Positions 1 to 10,596 of a stretch of DNA of 64,000 bases are shown here, in pieces. The notes under the pieces are model-generated. The model was not told where the DNA came from and did not search any database. It worked only from the letters and a program-made list of their open reading frames with translations. The DNA is from Piromyces finnis finn (lineage: Eukaryota > Fungi > Neocallimastigomycota). The translations under genes were made by a program, and so were the position numbers. Within the stretch, counting starts at the first letter, position 1, and each line of letters starts with the position of its first letter. Location of the stretch: positions 1,426,001 through 1,490,000 of the forward strand of contig MCFH01000002.1 in the NCBI GenBank assembly GCA_002104945.1, written 5' to 3'.

Positions 1-3000
1 CATTTTTTTTGAAAAATTAATAAAAAAATTATTAATATTTTTTCAAATATGAAAAATATAAAGGATTAGATTATAATAATTTTATTTCATATTATACTCC
101 GATATTTTTTATAAAAATATATATATATAATTATATTCATAATATATGCAAAATATATAGAATAATAAATTTTTCAGGGTATAGGTTTGAAAATGAATTA
201 AAAAAAAATAGGAATATAAATTATTAAAAAAAAAGGCCTAATTATATTTTTATGGCATTACAATGTTGCATAATTAATATTTATTTCCATTTTTCCATAA
301 TAAATATATAAAAATAAAGTTTTAAGGATCGTATATATATAAAAGACATTAATATTCATACATTATTAGAGAATTTAGTATTTTTTAAAATATAATAATC
401 CTATCCTATAATTGTATTATTAATATTCTAAAATTTTACCTTTCCTTTACTATAATATTAAGTATCCATAGCTACGTTTAATGTTATATTTTATTAAATA
501 GAATATTACTTACTATATATTATTTATGTTTTTAATCTAATATTTATTACATTTTATTACATACTCGATAATAACTATAATAATTATTTTTAAATTATAT
601 AGAGCTTTGGTTAGAAATTATTTCGAAAAAAATTTTTTTTAAATGGTCGAAAGTGTTAAATTAAAAACTGATATAAAACATCATTCATATTTCTCTTACA
701 CAAACATCATTAGTATATTAAATATCACATTTTTTATACATAAAATAACAAAGTCTTAATGGTTTTTTCATTTTTTACTATTTTTCTCTTAATGGTTAAA
801 CTCTGTTAAACTCTCCTTTTTTTTTTTCATAAATATTTTTATAGGAAAATTTAAACAATTTAATGAAAATTTATTCCATAAATTTGATATATATTATATT
901 ATATATTAGAATTGTATTTAATTCTATTGATTATCCCTGTGTGATGAATATTATGATATAAGCTTTTTATTTATATTAAGTACTTAAATTAAAAATAATA
1001 TAATAATTTAATATAATTTGTGTAATGGTAAGTACCACAAATCTATATAGTCATTTGTATTAATTGTTTGGTGTAATACAAATTAAAGTATAATTTAATA
1101 ATTTAATAGACATGAAACGTTAATTACAACAATATATTATTTTGGAGAGCTTTATTATTATATAAAAATTATATAATTACTAATATATATAATAAATAAT
1201 ACATTACTATTATAGTATATAAAAATAAAAGTTTATATTATAATATATTTCAAAGATATAGTTATAATTAATTCTTTTTTTAATGTTAAATTTACATTAG
1301 ACTAATTTTTAAATTATTCATTTTAAATAATTAAGAAATATGAAGAAACTTCAATAAATATTAAAACAAAAGCATTACATCAATTACTTTACATCTTTCA
1401 TATTTAGCATTAATGCTAGAATCCTTTTTAACTTTAAGTCATTTGTTTTCCTATCTTTATAAAATTTACACTTGATACCATAAATATTAATAAACTACTA
1501 ATTATTTTTAAAAAAATAAAATATTTATTATAATGCTATTTTAAAGTGATTATTATGACTATTAATTAAATTTTTGTTTTAAATTATGACATAACTTTAA
1601 TTTATTAATATTGGATTTAACATTTACAAAGCCTTTGAGATGTATATATATATTTTTTAAATTCTATATCAAGTAATTGTATGAGCATATTTAATCTAAA
1701 ACAGTAAAAAAAAACTTTATTATTATTGTTTTTGATAAAGTAATACTATATACAATATTCTCATTTTAAACCTTTCTATAGTTATTATAGTGGGTAATGT
1801 TTTATAATTGTTTTATTTTATTTGTTTTTATTTTAATAGGGATTATATGAGGTGAATTTTTACTAAATTTTCATATTATTTACTATAGAAATTTCGGTTT
1901 TATAATTAAAACTATTTTTTATATTTATAAAATTTTTAAACTTTAATTTATGATAAAACTTTTTATGAGAATATTTAAAACCTATATATTAGTATAATAT
2001 ATTAATATTATTATTTAAAAAAGGTTTCATTGTGACAGGAATAAGCTTTAATTTTTTTATTTTTATCCGTTTTATTGAATTATCATATATATATATTTTA
2101 TATTTTTATATATGTAATAATGTATGAAACATATATAAAGTATTAGGTTAAGTATACAATTTAAAACATATTTTTATCATAATTAATTTTTATTAAATAA
2201 ATTATAATTAATAAAATTAATTAAATATAAAATTAAAGTTTCTTAAATATTAAAGATATGCAAAATGAAAATTAAAATCATTATTTAATAAAGTTAATTT
2301 AATAATTTTTTAATTTGAATTAATTTTTAATATATTATACCTATAATAGAGTGTTGAATTTTTGATTAGTAGGTGTTGTAACCGTTTATATGATCAACTT
2401 TGATTTACTATCCAAAAATAAATATTAAAATGAAATTAAAAATAAATATATGATTTTTTAGACCAAAAACATAAAAAAAAATTTTTTTTCAAAAATATTT
2501 CTTATTATTAATGATATAGTATAAAAAATAGCTTAGGAAAAATAAAATAAAATAAATATACCAGGTTATAATGTAATAATAGTAAGAAATGGTCAATAAC
2601 TAATTAAAAATTTATAGTATTAATTTTCAACATTTAACATTATATTAAAAATTGAAATATTTTTTTTATGATATATATTATCATTTTTTAAATTTAAGTA
2701 ATAGATGATATTTATTTTATATAATACTTTCTATTATTATATTTATTTACAATATTAATAGACGAATTATTTAAAATTTTATTTAGATATATTACTAATA
2801 GTATCAAACAAAAAAGTAGACCATTTTAGAAATTACAGAAATGAATGAATTTAATGTTGAAAAAGAATAATATTAATATTTATTAATATTTTCCTTTAGA
2901 AAAAAAAGGATGTAATTAATTAATTATAATTACAGAAATAAACCGTTTGAAAAGAAAGAATAATGTTAATAATTAATAAAAAGAAAGGCTGTTAATTATA

Positions 3001-5221
3001 ATTATATATTGAATTATGACTTCCGGAAAATGAAATACTTAATAAAAAGTATATGTCATATATAATAAAATTTAGTTTTAATTATTGGTTATATTTTCTA
3101 CTCTAAAGAGAGTGGTACAAGTATAATATTCCTAAAAATTTAACAAAGTAAATCTACTCCTGGTATTTAAAGAAATTTAATTTGATGTCGGGGATTTAAA
3201 TCATAATACCATACGGATGAAAAAAAAGAAATAAAATTTTACTGCACTTTATTAATTATTATAATTCTTTTTATTTTTCACTAGTTTTTTAATTATTATT
3301 AAAAAACTAATAATATTTCTCATAATTATTAAATTATGAAAATATTTTTATAGTGATAATCACTTATTTTAATTAAATAATAAATTATTAGCCGTTTTTT
3401 TTTTAAAGTTATGACTGCAATTTAAATTTCATTTTTAAGTAAAAGTGATACTTTCTTTAAATAAATAAAAAAAAAACAATTAATAACTAAAGCACAATTT
3501 TTTTTATTACTTTGTTTTTTTGTTTCATATTTGTAATAAGCAGTTTCATAGTTAATTTACTTTATTTTTTTATAAAAATTGAATTTGTGTCATTTAAAAA
3601 AAATGATTTTTTTAAAAATTATGTTGAAATATTTTTCAAATAAATATAATATATTATAGTCAATAATAAATATATTAACAATTTATTACTAATTATAGTT
3701 AATATTATTTTACATTAAATATGATATAAAGTTTAATTAATGATTTATAATAAAATAAGTTTGAAATACAAAATTTAATTTATTTATAATTTTAATATGT
3801 TTTAAGTAACTATAAATTATATAATAAAAGAACGAATGAAATTAAAAATATATTAATAATCACAATATTAAACTTTTTAAAATAATTAATATATGTTTTT
3901 AACATAGTCTTATATTTCGGAGATAATAAAAAATATTATTTTGTTATTATCAAAAATAAAGCAATTTATTATTATTATTATTATTACTAGCTCATAAGAT
4001 TTTCTATTAATTAATCACAATACTATGTTATTCATTTTTTAGTTAATAACACATATACTCTATTTTAAATACAATAAATTGATATTTTTTTTGTATTGAA
4101 ATATGTATTGTTAATGTTTATACAATGTAATTATTCTTTTTTTTTTTTTTTATTATTATATTAATAATATGTAACTTATTTTTTTGCAGTATAGCTATAT
4201 AATCTATTAATATATAATTTTAAAAGTACCATTTCTTATAATTACTATTAAATATATTAGTTTAGTAAATTAATATTATATGGTTATTTTATGAGAGAAA
4301 TATTTAATATATAATATAATAATAATTAAATATATATGTTTTAAGTTTTCCAATATATTTATTAGTATTAACCAATTCAAAAAATATTAAAAAATTAATT
4401 TCATTTTAACCTAGCCAATGATACTTCTTCTCCTATCCATTTTTGTGTAATATATGAATAATATTAGCATACATTCATATATAAATTAATATAAATAATA
4501 TATATAATAAAATTGAAAAAAGAGATACATATATATAATATTCAATAAACTTGTGATTAATATATAATATTTATATTCTATTAATTTAAAAGAAATAAAA
4601 AAGGTTGGTGAACTCTTTTTCTAATATATGTATATTAATTTTAATTAAATAATATAATATTATAATGATATAATTGATATTTTATTAATTATTAAAATTA
4701 GTATTAATATATTAGGCTTTTTTAATAAAATAGTTTTATATTAGAATATATTAAAATAAATAGTAAAATATATTGATCCCAATATACATATGATATATTT
4801 AATCATATATTTTTATGTTACATAAGTAAACACATTATATTTTATACTATTTTTAAAAAATTATTTAAAGGACAAAAATTTCTCTTTTAATTTAAAATTC
4901 AATAAAAATTGTATTAACAAACAATTAAAAATAACATATTTTAAAAAAAATTTAAAAAAAAAAATGTTTTAAAAATTTATAATTTTCTTTATAAAAAATT
5001 GAAAGTTTTATTGAATAAAACAATTAAAAATGTTTTAAAAAATGCTTAACAAAATTTTCGTTAATAGAAAATAGTTTTAAAATAATTCGATATTATATAA
5101 AATGTTTTCTAATATTTATTAAAAAATAATATATTGTATATATTATTTAAATTTTTATTTAAATACTTTTTTTAACGAACTCAAAATTATGAGTATAAAT
5201 AATAAATAAAAATTAATATTC

Positions 5222-5338
5222 TTGATAGATTTCGCTTCGGCATCTTAAAAATATAATGTTTTTACGAATTTTCTAAATGAAAAGGATAGTGGGTGACCGA
5301 CACTGAGGTACTGCGTATCTTCGTGCAGAATATCTACG
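5222..5338 (+). ncRNA. Candidate structured RNA/DNA element, copy 1 (type I)
   Basis: GC-richer island TTGATAGATTTCGCTTCGGCA...TGACCGACACTGAGGTACTGCGTATCTTCGTGCAGAATATCTACG, repeated with base-pair covariation at 5517, 5692 and 6280. Strand assignment is tentative: several G-U pairs fit the + strand. Confidence 0.55.
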
Positions 5339-5384
5339 GAATATAAATATCGCAAGACATCATAACAAATAAGAAATAAATTGT

Positions 5385-5486
5385 ATGATATAATTCTTCT
5401 CGGAAATGCTTCTAATAATGCAAGTCATTTATTTTGAAACATCTGATACCAAAGGAAACTAGCTTTTCAATAAAAAGAATATCTAC
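5385..5486 (+). repeat. Decayed copy of the same element (type II-like)
   Basis: TTCTTCTCGGAAATGCTTCTAATAATGCAAGTCATTTAT...CCAAAGGAAAC...AGAATATCTAC aligns collinearly with copy 3 (TTCGTTTCGGCAATATTTCTAATATGCTAGTTCATGTAT...CCAGAGGAAAC...AGATTATCTAC) but has lost the core pairings. Confidence 0.55.
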
Positions 5487-5516
5487 TATTTATTAAATTC
5501 AAAAATATAGTAAATT

Positions 5517-5664
5517 TGATGAATTTCGTTTCGGCATCTTAAAAATATAATGTTTTTACGAATTTTCTAAAAAAGAAATTTATTTTGAAAATAAAATTCC
5601 AAATTGAAAAGGATAGTGGGTGACCGACACTGAAGTACTGTGTACTCCCGTGCAGAATATTTGC
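5517..5664 (+). ncRNA. Candidate structured element, copy 2 (type I with extended internal hairpin)
   Basis: Same core (TTGAT..TTCGTTTCGGCA...TGACCGACACTGAAGTACTGTGTACTCCCGTGCAGAATAT), plus a self-complementary insert of about 30 nt lengthening an internal stem. Confidence 0.55.
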
Positions 5665-5691
5665 AATTTACTATTAAACTGAAAATTAAAT

Positions 5692-5796
5692 TTGATGGAT
5701 TTCGTTTCGGCAATATTTCTAATATGCTAGTTCATGTATGGAAAAAATGACCGACGCCAGAGGAAACAGGTATTTCCTTCGCGCAGATTATCTACG
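5692..5796 (+). ncRNA. Candidate structured element, copy 3 (type II)
   Basis: TTGATGGATTTCGTTTCGGCA...TGACCGACGCCAGAGGAAACAGGTATTTCCTTCGCGCAGATTATCTACG; different variable region, same core pairings. Confidence 0.55.
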
Positions 5797-6279
5797 ATTT
5801 AATTTTTAGACTATTAATGCAAAACGAATTTAAATTAATGAATTTTAAAAATTGTATATGCAAGCTCATATATGAAAATTAAGAATAAAAAAGAAGTTAG
5901 CTGGCTCTACTTCTTGAAAATTCTATAATTATTTATTTATTACATAATTACGTTTAGAAAAATTCAATAAGACAATAAAGTGCTTTAGACATTTTAATTG
6001 TATAGTTTTAGAATTTTTTTATTTTCATCATACAGTATAAGTCATTAGAGTTTATTTTCATATATTTATTTTTTGATAAAATATTATAATTAAAAATCAA
6101 ACATAAATTATTTATTTTTTGATAAAATAACAAGCAAAAAATGATATCCCGAAGAAAACCAAACCAAAAATCACTAAAAATCATCTCATAACATAATTAT
6201 TTTTTTTCCTTGTAAATCAAGAAAAAAAGAGTTTGCTTTTCTTTTTGACAAAGAAATTATTAAAATTAACAAGAAATTA

Positions 6280-6420
6280 TTGATAGTTTACGCTTCGGCA
6301 TTTTAAAAACGTAATGTTTTTACGAATTTTCTTTAAATCTAATTTTGAAAATAAAATTTAAAGAAAAGGATAGTGAGTGACCGACGCTGAGGTACAGGTG
6401 CCTTCGCGCAGTAATCTACG
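6280..6420 (+). ncRNA. Candidate structured element, copy 4 (type I)
   Basis: TTGATAGTTTACGCTTCGGCA...TGACCGACGCTGAGGTACAGGTGCCTTCGCGCAGTAATCTACG, with insert hairpin CTTTAAAT..ATTTAAAG. Confidence 0.55.
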
Positions 6421-7570
6421 TAATTTATAATGTCATTTATATCAGCTTAAATAGCTAAAAAGTATAAATATAAATACAAATGTAAAAAAAAAAAAAAAAG
6501 GTTGTTGTTTTTTTATGCTAAAAAAAAATAACAAATTATAATATATATAATAAATAAAAAATAAAATTTGTATTATATCTTTAGATAAAAAAAAAAAAAA
6601 AAGCAAGTGTAAAATTTTTGTATATTTAAATTTTTTTATTTTATTTAAAGATGAATAGAGTGTTTATGAAATTAAATGAGAATTGATTAATGTTGATAGT
6701 CTATTAGTTTATTTTCCAAAAAGAAGTCTTTTAAATTTTTGGAGAATAAAATTAAATGCTCTTTATTTTTATTCTTGAAGTAATAAAAAGTATGAAAAAA
6801 TAATTGCCAATTTTTAAAAACTATTCTAATTGAAGTAAAAATTATATACTAAAAATTATAAAATTAAGCATATCATGATAAATTATTAATGCCTAATAAT
6901 AATATTTTACATCATTGTTACAATTGTTAGTAATACTAATAATAATCAATAAACTTATGTTTGACTATTCACTTCATCAATAATAATTTAATAATAGTAA
7001 TAATAAAAAAAAAAAACTCATAGTAAATTTAAGAGACAAGAAGTAACAATAAATAAAATTTTACATTATTTATTAGAACATTTTGTATTAGGCATTTTTA
7101 TTATTTTTATTGACAGTAGTAACATTTAATAAATAGTTCTTTTATTAATTAAAAGGATAAAAAATTAATAATAATGCTACATAAATATTTAGTTTTTGTT
7201 AATCCCAAGAAAAAAACATATTTACTTACAGAATAAAATGTTTGTAATCTTTTAATAATAATATTTTTTTTTTTATTAGAATTATAAATTAAATTTTAAA
7301 GAGGAATATTTGGACTGGACAATTGAAATGTTTAATGTTTAATAATAATATCATTAAAATTTGGAAATAACCATTATTTATAAAAAACAGAAAATAAAAA
7401 GGAAGTTTTATCATTTTTTACTACTTTGATCATTTTTGAACTTTTATATTGAAATTAATATTAATAATATTATTGCTTGAATATAAAAATAATTTTTAAA
7501 CTTTCAATATATCTAAAGTCAAAATCAAAAAACACCTTAATATAATATATTTAAAATTAAATTCTACCAC

Positions 7571-7713
7571 AATATATAGTATAAAAAAAAATATCAAAAC
7601 GAAAAAATATATATTATATTAAATACAATGTATAATATAATTATTATTTAATTTCTTTTATTTCTGTGTATTTTAATAATTATATTTAATTATTTATTGA
7701 TATATATTAATAT

Positions 7714-7747
<34 letters not shown>

Positions 7748-10596
7748 CTATTATCTTATTATTAAAATAATTAAATTTTTATTTTTTAATTTTATTAATT
7801 TTTATTACTAACAAACCATTATTGGTTATTTTTGATGTAATATTCATAAGATCAGCATCATCTGGAATCTTTATCTTTGTGGTTTCTTTAATATTTTCTT
7901 GTATATGTTTTTTCAAGTGAGCTTTGCTTTTAGTCTCTCTTTCCTTATTATTTTTTTTCTTTTTATCTTTTTCATTAGGATCCTTTCCAATAATAGATAA
8001 AATATGCTTTTTATTATATTTAATTTTAATTTGATCTTTTTCTAATCCAGATAAATAAACATAAATGTAATAGTTATTTTCATTTTGCTTAATGACCGGT
8101 AAGGATCTACTCATCTTTTTCATTGAATGATTTTTCATTGAATGATTTTTCATTGAATGATTTTTCATTGAATGATGCCAATCAAATGGAACAAATGAAT
8201 TTAAGAAATGACAGTGTTTATTACGATATAATGAACGGCCACGATGACAATGATGATGATAAAGATGATGATGACAACGATGTTTAAATAAATTTATAGA
8301 ATACCAACCTTTGTGACATTTATTCTTCCATTTATTTTTACATTTATTTTTACATTTATTTTTATATTTATTTATAATATGTCCTTCAAATGGATTTTTA
8401 AATGGTCCTAATGAATGACAACGACGATGTCCATGATGTCCATAATTACCAATATGTCCTTCGAATGGATTTTTAAATGGACCTAATGAATGGCAATGAC
8501 GATGTCCATGATGTCCATGATGTTCATGATGACTTTCAAATGGACCTAATGAATGGCAACGACGATGTCCATGATGTCCATGGTGTCCATGATGACTTTC
8601 AAATGGACCTAATGAATGGCAACGACGATGTCCGTGATGTCCATAATTACCAATATGTCCTTCAAATGGATTTTTAAATGATCCTAAAGAGTGATAACAA
8701 TGACCATAGTGATGATATGCATGTCCAATATGATCTTGATAAATATTATTTTTATGAATATTATTTTTATGAATATTATTTTTATGAATGTTATTATGAT
8801 TGATACATTCAAAATTGTTCATTGATTGTAAAAATTGACGAAGACAATGACAATTAAAACGTGAATTTTCAAGTAGATATTTTTCACCAAAAGAACAATG
8901 ACTAGGATGGATCAAATGATGGATCGAACGACAGAAAGGTGGTGATGATTTTGAGTAAAGAGAAAAATTATGGTGACAGTGTTGATGATGCTTTTGTTGA
9001 TCAGTAGAATCAAAAGAATGATGAACTGAAATAGGTTTAAAAGCACAAAAACGAATATTATGACGACGACGATAACTGTAAAAATGACGATCATGAAAAT
9101 GTTTATGAAGATGTCCATGAAGATGTCCATGAAGATGTCCATGAAGATGTCCATGAAGATGTCCATGAAAATGACCATGAAGATGTCCATGAAAATGACC
9201 ATGAAAATGTCCATGAAAATGTCCATGAAGATGACCGTGAGAATGGAAATGATGATTCATTTTCATGAAATAATACCATTGACCATCACCCAATCCCAAT
9301 AAGTATTTTTTCATTAAAGAATGACAATGATGATAATTTCTAAATGAATTAAATGGTCTAAATGGTTTCATAAAATGGTGTGGATGTCTTATTGGTACCA
9401 TGTGCTTCATTGGTGGACATGAATGACCATGACCAAAAGGTCTCGTTGGTTTTAGTTCATGCCCGAAGCTAGAATTGAAGTGTTGATGTTTTTTTGGACG
9501 AAAAGAATCATTAAATTTATGAGGACTACAAATATCATGAAAATGACCTTTAAATTCATGATGACCATGAAATCCATGAGAATGATTTTTAAATAAATGA
9601 CCAAATTCATGATGACCATGGCGACCATAACGACCATGATGGTTATAATAAGCATGAGGACCATAATAAGCATGAGGACTATTAAATCCATGAGGATCAT
9701 GAGAATCATTAGGATCATGAGGACTATTAAATCCATGAGGACCATGAGGACCATGAGGATCATGAGAACTATTAAATCCATTTGGACCATGAGGATCATG
9801 AGAATCATGAGAACTATTAAATCCATTTGGACCATGAGGATCATGAGAATCATGAGAACTATTAAATCCATTTGGACCATGAAAATCTGGCATTAAAGCA
9901 TAGCCAAAATTATTACCACAGTGTTCATTTTTATGATAAAAGTAGCCATAATGATGACCATAATGACTATGATAACCATGATGATCATGACAACCACGAA
10001 GATTATTATCATGATTAAATGAGACAGTTCTTTGATTAGGATGACCAAAGTCATGATTTAAAGCACCATTAAAACAATTGCCTCCAAAAAATGAAGGTAA
10101 TGGTTTACCATAGTTAAAAAGCATTCTTTTTTATTTTTTATTTTTTTTAATTATTAATAATACTAATACTAATAATAATACTAAAAATTTTATTTTATTT
10201 TTTTTAATTGTAAATTGCTATATTATATATATAATAAACTATATATTTTAATTAAATATTATATTTTAATAATTAATATTTAATTGATGAAAAAAAAAAA
10301 AAAAAAAAAGAAAAAGAAAAACTTTGACTTTTTATATTTTCAAGTAAACTTTACATTTATATTATATGTTCCATTCTGATATAAGGTATTGAATTACAAA
10401 TCCAAGGAATAAAGTAAATTTTATTTTAATTTATTGTTAATATAATAAAAACAAATGATTTTTTAACGAATTAGTAATAAAATATATATTAAAATATATA
10501 TAATTGAATTTATTACTAATTCAAAAAATTGTTTAATATATTTATTAAAGTTTTTGATCTTTTTTTTCTTTTTTTTTTTCAGAGTTTCTATAGAAT
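7571..10596 (-). repeat. Left arm of large inverted repeat (gene palindrome)
   Basis: Reverse complement of 11302-15850, including ~470 bp upstream and ~200 bp downstream non-coding sequence. Identity breaks at ...GAGTTTCTATAGAAT (10596) and at ~7571 (AATATATAGTATAAAA). Confidence 0.95.
7779..10124 (-). CDS. His/Gly/Cys-rich repeat protein with C-terminal Hsp20/alpha-crystallin-like domain (781 aa, short paralog)
   Basis: Intronless ORF. The C-terminus (YYIYVYLSGLEKDQIKIKYNKKHILSIIGK...KIKIPDDADLMNITSKITNNGLLVIKINK) matches the alpha-crystallin-domain pattern (LPG..KEDIKI..LTISG...LPddvD...I.ak..NGvL.I.iPK). The N-terminal ~670 aa consist of several His-rich repeat blocks. Confidence 0.8.
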   Translation of the reverse strand: MLFNYGKPLPSFFGGNCFNGALNHDFGHPNQRTVSFNHDNNLRGCHDHHGYHSHYGHHYGYFYHKNEHCGNNFGYALMPDFHGPNGFNSSHDSHDPHGPNGFNSSHDSHDPHGPNGFNSSHDPHGPHGPHGFNSPHDPNDSHDPHGFNSPHAYYGPHAYYNHHGRYGRHGHHEFGHLFKNHSHGFHGHHEFKGHFHDICSPHKFNDSFRPKKHQHFNSSFGHELKPTRPFGHGHSCPPMKHMVPIRHPHHFMKPFRPFNSFRNYHHCHSLMKKYLLGLGDGQWYYFMKMNHHFHSHGHLHGHFHGHFHGHFHGHLHGHFHGHLHGHLHGHLHGHLHGHLHKHFHDRHFYSYRRRHNIRFCAFKPISVHHSFDSTDQQKHHQHCHHNFSLYSKSSPPFCRSIHHLIHPSHCSFGEKYLLENSRFNCHCLRQFLQSMNNFECINHNNIHKNNIHKNNIHKNNIYQDHIGHAYHHYGHCYHSLGSFKNPFEGHIGNYGHHGHRRCHSLGPFESHHGHHGHHGHRRCHSLGPFESHHEHHGHHGHRHCHSLGPFKNPFEGHIGNYGHHGHRRCHSLGPFKNPFEGHIINKYKNKCKNKCKNKWKNKCHKGWYSINLFKHRCHHHLYHHHCHRGRSLYRNKHCHFLNSFVPFDWHHSMKNHSMKNHSMKNHSMKKMSRSLPVIKQNENNYYIYVYLSGLEKDQIKIKYNKKHILSIIGKDPNEKDKKKKNNKERETKSKAHLKKHIQENIKETTKIKIPDDADLMNITSKITNNGLLVIKINKIKK

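What the first reader, a model, noticed from the sequence alone, without database searches (positions are those of the whole stretch)
5222..6420. Tandem array of an unrecognised structured element with compensatory base changes (candidate novel ribozyme/ncRNA)
Seen: four GC-richer copies (5222-5338, 5517-5664, 5692-5796, 6280-6420) in DNA that is otherwise almost all A/T. They share the core TTGA-TRG(A/T)T-T(T/A)CG(C/T)T-TCGGCA-[variable]-TGACCGA-CRC-..-[hairpin]-..-GYG-CAG..-ATCTAC. Pairing is conserved while sequence changes. (a) CAC/GTG in copies 1 and 2 (5301-03/5323-25; 5628-30/5650-52) becomes CGC/GCG in copies 3 and 4 (5755-57/5781-83; 6385-87/6406-08). (b) The terminal hairpin is AGGTAC/GTATCT, AGTAC/GTACT, AGGAAA/TTTCCT and AGGTA/TGCCT in the four copies. 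(c) TCGGCA pairs with TG(A)CCGA to close a variable region whose inserts are themselves hairpins extending a TTTTC/GAAAA stem. (d) An outer TAGAT/ATCTA-type stem closes the whole element. This gives a three-way junction with conserved unpaired strands (UUCGYU and CAGA). Inference: structure conservation with sequence divergence in clustered copies is how small self-cleaving ribozymes appear in eukaryotic repeats. By eye the core does not fit hammerhead, HDV-like, twister, twister-sister, pistol, hatchet or hairpin consensus.
Basis: partly seen in the sequence, partly recalled or inferred. Interest (0 to 1): 0.85.

Follow-up and report, generated by a model that had tools for sequence, protein, structure and literature searches.

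The report
New folded RNA gene cluster, gut fungus
A gene-free stretch of the anaerobic gut fungus Piromyces finnis holds four copies of an RNA of about 130-170 bases whose fold is kept while its letters change; it matches no catalogued RNA, related fungi keep the same cluster, and nothing shows that it cuts itself.

Summary
Four same-strand copies lie at the stated places, and they are the only ones in the 64 kb window. Rfam 15 gives no match, even at E<=10, and ARAGORN finds no tRNA.

A metagenome scan found three AT-rich contigs with matching arrays, giving 17 copies in all.

- **Fold:** on these copies the fold is strongly supported. About 94% of pair cells are paired, against 45-60% when partners are slid. 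17-20 pairs changed on both sides, and 0 of 500 shuffles reach this.
- **Strand:** G.U outnumbers A.C by 93 to 14, so the + strand is the RNA.
- **Closing helix:** each unit is also closed by a 6-13 bp A/U helix made from its own flanks.
- **Conservation:** units are 78-90% identical between most corresponding positions (window copy 3, which lost its arm, 51-67%). Flanks are mostly 45-70% identical.

This is a real, undescribed structured RNA family of anaerobic gut fungi. It is probably co-transcribed and either released or insulated by its closing helices, and probably works as a protein-binding RNA. The ribozyme idea is neither supported nor excluded, and no expression data could be reached.

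The parts
5216..5344 (+). Unit W1 (subtype c1), short form lacking the P2c hairpin. P0 5216-5221/5339-5344; P1 5223-5233/5328-5338; P2 5237-5245/5291-5300; P2a 5247-5263; P2b 5269-5273/5279-5283; P3 5301-5325.
   Evidence: CM R1 135.9 bits, E 4e-32; helix coordinates; P0 run of 6 bp.
5449..5499 (+). Decayed relic of the 3' half of a c3-type unit (P3 hairpin remnant plus AGAATATCTAC) in the spacer between W1 and W2.
   Evidence: Aligns with W3/B3 3' halves and with relics at the same place in L028 and L120.
5507..5674 (+). Unit W2 (subtype c2), full form. P0 5507-5515/5666-5674; P1 5517-5527/5655-5665; P2 5531-5539/5618-5627; P2a 5541-5557; P2b 5563-5567/5606-5610 enclosing P2c; P3 5628-5652.
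   Evidence: CM R1 149.5 bits, E 1e-35; P0 run of 9 bp.
5679..5809 (+). Unit W3 (subtype c3), deletion variant. It keeps P0 (13 bp), P1, the P2 core and a longer P3 (5755-5783) but has lost P2a/P2b. It starts 4 nt after the end of W2.
   Evidence: CM R1 59.1 bits, E 1e-12. Its counterparts A2, B3 and C3 in the other loci have the full arm. P0 run of 13 bp.
6274..6426 (+). Unit W4 (subtype c4), full form. P0 6274-6279/6421-6426; P1 6281-6291/6411-6420; P2 6295-6303/6375-6384 (carries the compensatory C-G to U-A change); P2a 6305-6321; P2b 6327-6331/6363-6367 enclosing P2c; P3 6385-6408.
   Evidence: CM R1 145.7 bits, E 1e-34; P0 run of 6 bp.

Best explanation
This is a conserved cluster of four paralogous units of an undescribed structured non-coding RNA of anaerobic gut fungi. 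The window comes from Piromyces finnis.

The + strand RNA of each unit folds as follows:
- A long closing helix: P0, 6-13 A/U pairs made by the unit's own flanks, followed by P1 of about 10 bp with single-base bulges.
- A three-way junction that carries a fast-evolving hairpin, P3.
- An arm, P2, that ends in a second three-way junction (P2a, P2b/P2c) with invariant single strands ACGAA and GGAUAGU.

Inferred, not shown:
- The units are transcribed together by RNA polymerase II. This is at least true of the c2-c3 pair, which lie 4-27 nt apart.
- Each closing helix works as a processing or insulating stem. Either a double-strand-specific nuclease releases the unit, as for rRNA processing stems and polycistronic small-RNA clusters, or the helix lets each module fold independently within a long RNA.
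- The invariant junction strands are binding sites for a protein partner, so the RNA acts as a ribonucleoprotein scaffold rather than as an enzyme.
For: - **Fold (shown).** On 17 copies, 93.5-93.9% of pair cells are standard pairs, against 45-60% when partners are slid by 1-3 columns. 17-20 of 46 pairs changed on both sides, against 6-12 when slid. The covariation score is 0.23-0.245 against 0.13 in shuffles, and 0 of 500 shuffles reach it.
- **Strand (shown).** G.U 93 against A.C 14; 94.6% paired on + against 83.8% on -.
- **Closing helix P0 (shown).** Flush runs of 6-13 bp occur in 16 of 17 copies (mean 9.4). The mean is 3.9 for mismatched flank pairs and 2.5 in random AT-rich window DNA, where 6 bp or more occurs in 5% of cases. 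At least 8 different P0 sequences stay complementary. Pair counts are WC 149, G.U 11, A.C 1. The strongest mutual-information column pair is a P0 pair.
- **Constraint (shown).** Units are 78-90% identical between corresponding positions of four loci for most pairs. Pairs that include the two shortened window units fall to 51-79%. Flanks are mostly 45-70% identical. Positional subtypes c1-c4 and even a relic are kept across loci.
- **Not a known family (shown).** No Rfam match at gathering or at E<=10; no tRNA.
- **Co-transcription and Pol II (inferred).** The c2-c3 spacer is only 4-27 nt. An invariant internal T5 tract and T4 tracts argue against Pol III.
- **Not coding (shown).** Length differences in the P2c region are not multiples of three, and there is no ORF of 80 aa or more in 1-7778.
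Against: - No expression data could be reached, so transcription, transcript ends, processing and abundance are all unverified.
- Single-sequence folding energies are not better than shuffles.
- The P2 core (UCGG/CCGA) never varies, so it is supported only by energy and by its covarying extension.
- All 17 copies come from close relatives (four loci), so many 'cells' share descent. The number of independent events is smaller than the counts suggest.
- No protein partner, promoter or terminator was identified.
- The many invariant unpaired bases would fit a catalytic core as well as a protein site.
Confidence: 0.5

Rival explanations
1. The four units are never excised. They are repeated folded modules of one long non-coding RNA that serves as a multi-site docking platform, and P0/P1 only insulate each module's folding.
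For: Units lie as little as 4-27 nt apart and all on one strand. Conserved non-coding islands in the c3-c4 spacer and about 90 nt downstream of c4 are shared by three loci. Earlier notes of this scan report other multi-hairpin long RNAs in the same genome (unchecked).
Against: Spacers range from 4 to about 465 nt, are poorly conserved and hold decayed relics. L011 carries a partial inverted copy. No transcript data.
Confidence: 0.2
2. Each unit is a self-cleaving ribozyme of a new class that cuts a multi-unit transcript into monomers.
For: A junction-based fold has about 30 invariant unpaired bases, while the helices covary. Units are closely spaced on one strand with no room for separate promoters. 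There is no match to any catalogued RNA.
Against: No core of hammerhead, HDV-like, twister, twister-sister, pistol, hatchet, hairpin or hovlinc was detected (alignment). The P1/P2/P3 junction has only 5 unpaired bases. No tertiary covariation was found. New ribozyme classes are rare. The array is a conserved gene cluster, not a satellite.
Confidence: 0.08
3. The long closing helix (P0+P1, 16-23 bp) is a Dicer/RNase III substrate, and the units are precursors of small RNAs taken from the conserved 5' and 3' arms.
For: The closing helix has about the length of a small-RNA duplex. The most conserved blocks, about 21 nt at each end, lie in or next to it.
Against: The internal domain is as conserved as the arms, unlike microRNA precursors. 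The P0 sequence is not conserved, only its pairing.
Confidence: 0.07
4. It is a very divergent member of a known RNA class (spliceosomal, nucleolar, SRP/Y/vault-like) that Rfam models miss.
For: It shares the decamer CGCUUCGGCA with the U6 5' stem-loop (recalled from memory, not tested). There is a noise-level snR73 alignment at E 9.8 and 18.8 bits. The terminal-stem-plus-central-domain shape recalls Y, vault and VA RNAs.
Against: There are no ACAGAGA/AGC elements, no Sm site, no C/D or H/ACA boxes in the required positions and no tRNA fold. The internal T5 tract is unlike Pol III RNAs. Having four diverged paralogues is unusual for such genes.
Confidence: 0.07
5. It is a mobile element or a DNA-level feature: a MITE or SINE, Helitron ends, or insertion into palindromic AT sites.
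For: Each unit has inverted repeats at its ends and the copies are clustered.
Against: End repeats differ between copies but stay complementary, with G.U far outnumbering A.C. That points to selection on + strand RNA, not on a transposase site. The window has one cluster only. Arrays correspond position by position across loci. There is no transposase ORF in the roughly 10 kb gene-free region.
Confidence: 0.03

Closest known systems
Polycistronic small-RNA clusters of fungi and plants (snoRNA clusters, tRNA-snoRNA dicistrons)
   Same: Several small structured RNAs lie on one strand, separated by short spacers without room for separate promoters, and are presumably released from a common precursor.
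   Different: There are no box C/D or H/ACA elements, and the units are paralogues of one fold rather than different guides. Co-transcription is inferred, not shown.
rRNA processing stems (flanking inverted repeats cut by RNase III in bacteria and archaea)
   Same: The sequences just outside the conserved RNA pair with each other into a long helix that encloses the whole unit, and only the pairing is conserved, not the sequence.
   Different: This is a eukaryotic nuclear locus and a small RNA. No nuclease or cleavage site is known.
Self-cleaving ribozymes in tandem repeats (hammerhead in satellite DNA, HDV-like, twister)
   Same: Covarying helices surround a junction with invariant unpaired bases, and there are several copies on one strand.
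   Different: No known catalytic core is present. Junction strand lengths are 3/0/2 nt, against 7/3/1 in hammerhead. There is no Rfam match. It is a conserved cluster of diverged paralogues, not a satellite.
Terminal-stem small RNAs (Y RNA, vault RNA, adenovirus VA RNA)
   Same: Size is about 100-190 nt, the 5' and 3' ends form a long bulged helix, and there is a branched central domain.
   Different: An internal T5 tract argues against Pol III. There is no Ro-binding helix motif and no A/B boxes. No sequence or model match.
U6 snRNA 5' stem-loop
   Same: Shares the decamer CGCUUCGGCA (from memory).
   Different: Here the decamer is part of the J1/2 strand and the P2 helix, not a capping hairpin. 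ACAGAGA, the AGC triad and the U-tail are absent, and the Rfam U6 model gives no match.

Membership tests
Structured non-coding RNA (generic) | Base pairs kept through compensatory changes, above controls | tested here: met
   93.5-93.9% paired against 45-60% when slid. 17-20 pairs with double changes. 0 of 500 shuffles reach the covariation score.
Structured non-coding RNA (generic) | Strand asymmetry of wobble pairs (G.U on the RNA strand) | tested here: met
   G.U 93 against A.C 14 in P1-P3; G.U 11 against A.C 1 in P0.
Structured non-coding RNA (generic) | Transcribed as a stable RNA | not testable with these tools
   No RNA-seq access. Look-ups through spurious ORFs failed.
Hammerhead ribozyme | CUGANGA, GAAA and UH strands around a three-way junction | tested here: not met
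   CUGA after P2 is present in only some copies (CCGA or CCAGA in others). Junction strands are GYU / none / CA. No Rfam match at E<=10.
HDV-like, twister, twister-sister, pistol, hatchet, hairpin, hovlinc ribozymes | Match to the family covariance model | tested here: not met
   cmscan of Rfam 15 found nothing on window 5100-6500 at E<=10. On L011, L028 and L120 it gave only four unrelated noise hits.
Any self-cleaving ribozyme | Site-specific self-scission | not testable with these tools
   Needs in vitro transcription and a cleavage assay.
Box C/D snoRNA | Box C (RUGAUGA) and box D (CUGA) next to the terminal stem, forming a K-turn | tested here: not met
   The 5' UGAURG is box-C-like, but the 3' strand next to the closing helix is CG, not CUGA. 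snR73 scores 18.8 bits against a gathering score of 37, E 9.8.
tRNA or tRNA-derived SINE | Cloverleaf with A/B boxes | tested here: not met
   ARAGORN finds none in the window. There is no T-arm. The units form a single cluster.
Sm-class snRNA / U6 | Single-stranded Sm site RAU4-6GR; for U6, ACAGAGA and the AGC triad | tested here: not met
   No such conserved elements in the 17-copy alignment. No Rfam snRNA match.
RNA polymerase III small RNAs (Y, vault, 7SL-type) | No internal T-run terminator, and a T-run at the 3' end | tested here: not met
   An invariant internal TTTTT, plus TTTT tracts, occurs in 16 of 17 copies. There is no consistent T-run of 5 or more after the unit. That T5 stops Pol III in this fungus is assumed from other eukaryotes.
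MITE / DNA transposon subterminal repeats | Terminal inverted repeats of conserved sequence, target-site duplications, dispersed copies | tested here: not met
   End repeats differ between copies and covary. There is one cluster in 64 kb. Arrays correspond across loci.
Satellite / tandem repeat | Head-to-tail units of constant period | tested here: not met
   Spacers between full units are 162, 4 and 464 nt. Units are 51-78% identical within the window.

The most novel reading that the evidence does not exclude
The units are a new class of self-processing RNA. Each module cuts itself out of a polycistronic transcript, with the invariant junction strands forming the active site and the P0/P1 helix presenting the cleavage site.
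Probability: 0.07. Interest if true: 0.9.

Novelty: new variant of a known kind. Interest (0 to 1): 0.6.

Why it matters
Anaerobic gut fungi are key plant-fibre degraders, and their non-coding RNAs are almost uncharted. This finding is a well-defined new RNA fold: five to six helices, two three-way junctions and about 30 invariant unpaired bases. Comparative support is strong, the gene cluster is conserved, and the unit-enclosing helix built from unconserved flanks is unusual.

It gives a concrete target for RNA-seq, pull-down and cleavage assays. If the closing helices are processing stems, it would be a eukaryotic small-RNA counterpart of rRNA-style precursor processing. If the units cleave themselves, it would be a new ribozyme class. 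It also shows that GC-richer islands in these very AT-rich genomes are a productive way to find RNA genes.

Tried and rejected
- **Rfam.** Searches at gathering and at E<=10 on the window and on the homologous loci gave nothing meaningful.
- **ARAGORN.** No tRNA or tmRNA.
- **Metagenome pattern scan.** Only L011, L028 and L120 are real. The rest are chance hits in GC-rich bacterial contigs, for example one coding stretch recovered as L003, L037 and L088.
- **GTDB genomes and IMG/VR.** Three conserved patterns gave only chance hits, none confirmed by the covariance model.
- **Synteny route.** The neighbouring 781-aa protein has no detectable homologues.
- **Spurious-ORF routes.** Attempts to reach transcript contigs or further assemblies through ORFs overlapping the units all came back empty.
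- **Alternative pairings.** A pseudoknot between UUCG (5') and CGAA (J2a/2b) was rejected, because column 13 covaries with column 164 of P1 instead. A mutual-information scan found no tertiary pairs.
- **Readings rejected by inspection of the 17-copy alignment.**
  - Spliced-leader RNA: the candidate GU donors are not conserved.
  - Permuted or split tRNA.
  - SRP Alu domain: the order of motifs is wrong.
  - K-turn at the P0/P1 boundary: the 3' strand is CG, not GA.
  - Small peptide coding: the indels are not multiples of three.
- **Literature.** Full-text searches found no description of such an RNA in Neocallimastigomycota.

Full report
**Observation**

The region was read directly. Four GC-richer elements lie on the + strand at about 5222-5338, 5517-5666, 5692-5797 and 6280-6421. 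The surrounding DNA is 12-15% G+C.

The 3' half pattern matches exactly these four places, with 0.00 expected in shuffles. The 5' decamer CGYTTCGGCA also matches these four only, with 0.22 expected. A covariance model built later finds no other copy in the 64 kb window with filters off.

**Known families**

- Rfam 15 gives no match on the whole window at gathering thresholds.
- It gives none on 5100-6500 even at E<=10.
- On the homologous loci there are only four noise hits. The best is snR73 at 18.8 bits against a gathering score of 37, E 9.8.
- ARAGORN finds no tRNA or tmRNA.
- Full-text searches found no description of such an RNA in anaerobic fungi.

**Organism**

The neighbouring ORF maps the window to NCBI assembly GCA_002104945.1, contig MCFH01000002.1. 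That assembly is listed as Piromyces finnis, Neocallimastigales, in PMC6690862.

No gene is called, and no ORF of 80 aa or more exists, from before the window start to 7778. The array therefore sits in a gene-free stretch of about 10 kb.

**Relatives**

Nearly all are chance hits in GC-rich bacterial contigs.

Three AT-rich contigs hold arrays of the same element:
- L011 has 6 units plus a partial inverted one.
- L028 has 4 units plus a partial duplication.
- L120 has 3 units.

Scans of GTDB genomes and IMG/VR gave only chance hits, none confirmed by the model.

The arrays correspond position by position:
- The same four subtypes recur in the same order. They are c1, c2, c3 (with the long GGAAAC...UUUCC hairpin) and c4 (with UAUUGAUAG...GCAGUR).
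- The c1-c2 spacer holds the same decayed relic of a c3-type 3' half in three loci.
- Short non-coding islands in the c3-c4 spacer and downstream of c4 are shared.

For most pairs, units at corresponding positions are 78-90% identical. Pairs that include the shortened window units W1 or W3 are lower, at 51-79%. The 120-nt flanks are mostly 45-70% identical, which is close to what AT-rich DNA gives by chance.

**Structure**

The 17 copies were aligned (A3). I wrote a structure by hand and counted it. I then built a covariance model (R1), realigned the copies to it (A6) and counted again.

The + strand RNA folds into these helices:
- **P1:** formed by the 5' and 3' ends, about 10 bp, with a bulged A and a bulged U.
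- **P2:** UCGGCAUCU pairs with AGUGGGUG-A-CCGA.
- **P2a:** AAAAAY pairs with GUUUUU, with loop RUAAU.
- **P2b:** UUUUC pairs with GAAAA and encloses P2c.
- **P2c:** a variable stem with loop UUGAU.
- **P3:** CRC pairs with GYG, then a Y.C mismatch, then a 6-7 bp hairpin.

This makes two three-way junctions, P1/P2/P3 and P2/P2a/P2b. The invariant single strands are GYU, CA, ACGAA and GGAUAGU.

Counts against the two controls:

| Measure | Observed | 3' partners slid 1-3 columns | 500 shuffles |
|---|---|---|---|
| Pair cells that are standard pairs | 93.5-93.9% | 45-60% | not reached (0 of 500) |
| Pairs changed on both sides (of 46) | 17-20 | 6-12 | not reached (0 of 500) |
| Covariation score | 0.23-0.245 | 0.06-0.12 | 0.13 +/- 0.009, not reached (0 of 500) |

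Covariation is found in:
- P1, for example G-C/A-U/G.U at column 9-169 and U-A/A-U at 13-164.
- The P2 extension, C-G to U-A in 3-4 copies.
- P2b and P2c.
- Seven of the eight pairs of P3's main stem.

The P2 core never varies, so comparison neither supports nor contradicts it.

G.U pairs outnumber A.C by 93 to 14. The + strand gives 94.6% pairing and the - strand would give 83.8%. This points to an RNA of the + strand, not a DNA-level palindrome. Single-sequence folding energies are not unusual, with z between -0.3 and -1.0.

1. The 'variable' region is a conserved arm. Fifteen of 17 copies carry GGCAUCUUAAAAAURUAAUGUUUUUACGAAUUUUC ... GAAAAGGAUAGUGGG almost unchanged. Window copy 3 has lost it (59 bits against 130-160 for the others), and window copy 1 lacks only P2c.

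2. Each unit is closed by a further helix, P0, made of its own A/U-rich flanks. P0 sits flush against P1 with one bulged U.
   - Runs of 6-13 bp occur in 16 of 17 copies, with a mean of 9.4.
   - The mean is 3.9 when the 5' flank of one copy is paired with the 3' flank of another.
   - The mean is 2.5 in random AT-rich window DNA. There, 6 bp or more occurs in 5% of cases, 9 bp or more in 0.5%, and 12 bp or more in 0.08%.
   - At least eight different P0 sequences keep complementarity.
   - Over the first 12 positions there are 149 Watson-Crick pairs, 11 G.U and 1 A.C.
   - The strongest mutual-information column pair in the alignment is a P0 pair, U-A 7 and A-U 9.

The full units are therefore 5216-5344, 5507-5674, 5679-5809 and 6274-6426. 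W3 starts 4 nt after W2 ends.

**How it probably works**

What is shown is a conserved, strand-specific, multi-helix RNA fold under purifying selection. It is kept as four diverged paralogues in a cluster across related fungi.

The following steps are inferred:
- The c2 and c3 units are only 4-27 nt apart in three loci. That leaves no room for a separate upstream promoter, so at least these two are co-transcribed.
- The invariant internal TTTTT and several TTTT tracts argue against RNA polymerase III, by analogy with other eukaryotes. Polymerase II transcription of a multi-unit precursor is therefore the likeliest.
- The closing helix, P0+P1, is 16-23 bp. Its outer part keeps pairing but not sequence. 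That is what one expects of a processing or insulating stem. Either a double-strand-specific nuclease releases each unit, as in rRNA processing stems and polycistronic small-RNA clusters, or the helix lets each module fold on its own within a long RNA.
- About 30 invariant unpaired bases are concentrated at the two junctions. They most simply fit a protein-binding surface.

I put about 0.9 on 'real new structured RNA family' and about 0.5 on the co-transcribed, stem-delimited, protein-binding reading.

**Ribozyme reading**

- No known self-cleaver core is present.
- The hammerhead-like CUGA after P2 is not conserved.
- The first junction has only five unpaired bases.
- No Rfam ribozyme model scores.
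- No tertiary covariation was seen.

The arrangement is a conserved gene cluster rather than a satellite. Still, close spacing on one strand and many invariant unpaired bases are compatible with self-processing. Nothing here can test cleavage, so I leave it at about 0.07-0.08.

**Other rivals**

- **Mobile element or DNA palindrome.** This is disfavoured by covarying rather than conserved termini, by the G.U excess, by the single cluster and by the position-by-position correspondence across loci.
- **Divergent known RNA.** This is disfavoured by the absence of every defining box or site that I could check.
- **Dicer precursor.** This remains possible but fits poorly with an internal domain that is as conserved as the arms.

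**Limits**

- All homologues are close relatives, in four loci of unknown taxonomic spread.
- The metagenome scan was truncated.
- No expression data or other Neocallimastigomycota genomes could be searched by nucleotide.
- Routes through spurious ORFs or the neighbouring protein failed.

Earlier notes of this scan list other undescribed multi-hairpin RNAs in the same genome but not this one.

Noticed in passing
window 5977-6012 (also L011 about 1405-1440, L028 minus strand): A roughly 35-nt island (AAAGTGCTTTAGACATTTTAATTGTAYAGTTTTA) in the c3-c4 spacer is almost identical between the window and L011 and recognisable in L028, although the surrounding spacer has diverged. No convincing fold was found. 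It could be a promoter element or another small RNA.
   Followed up: partly
window 6071-6086, 6114-6129 and 6141-6163: A twice-repeated TTTTTTGATAAAAT motif and an ATGATATCCCGAAGAAAA island in the same spacer are conserved in L028. The first resembles the P2c loop of the units and may be debris of old copies.
   Followed up: partly
window 6236-6257: A palindrome, TTTTCTTTTTGACAAAGAAA, lies 50-70 nt upstream of the c4 unit in all three loci that reach it (window, L028, L011). It may be a regulatory hairpin or a promoter element of c4.
   Followed up: no
window 6507-6529: A T-run, then ATGCT, then an A-run (an A/U hairpin) lies about 90-180 nt downstream of the last unit in the window, L028 and L011. 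It may mark the end of the array's transcript.
   Followed up: no
L011 1-123 (minus strand): A partial inverted duplicate of unit A2 (its P2c to P3 part) sits at the contig start. It is either a real inverted duplication or an assembly fold-back.
   Followed up: partly
L028 799-840 (minus strand): A 42-nt tandem duplication of the 3' end of unit B2 (P3 3' part, P1 3' strand and flank) lies between B2 and B3. It shows how relic fragments arise in the spacers.
   Followed up: partly
window 5383-5450: A GC-richer stretch between W1 and the relic has box-C-like ATGATA and a CTGA followed by a short complementary end. By eye it looks like a box C/D snoRNA, but no Rfam match was found.
   Followed up: no
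window 7779-10124 (minus strand): The neighbouring 781-aa ORF returned no homologue at E<=1e-10 among the 8000 word-sharing candidates in the 5.8-billion-protein collection. This is consistent with a repeat-rich, lineage-specific protein.
   Followed up: no
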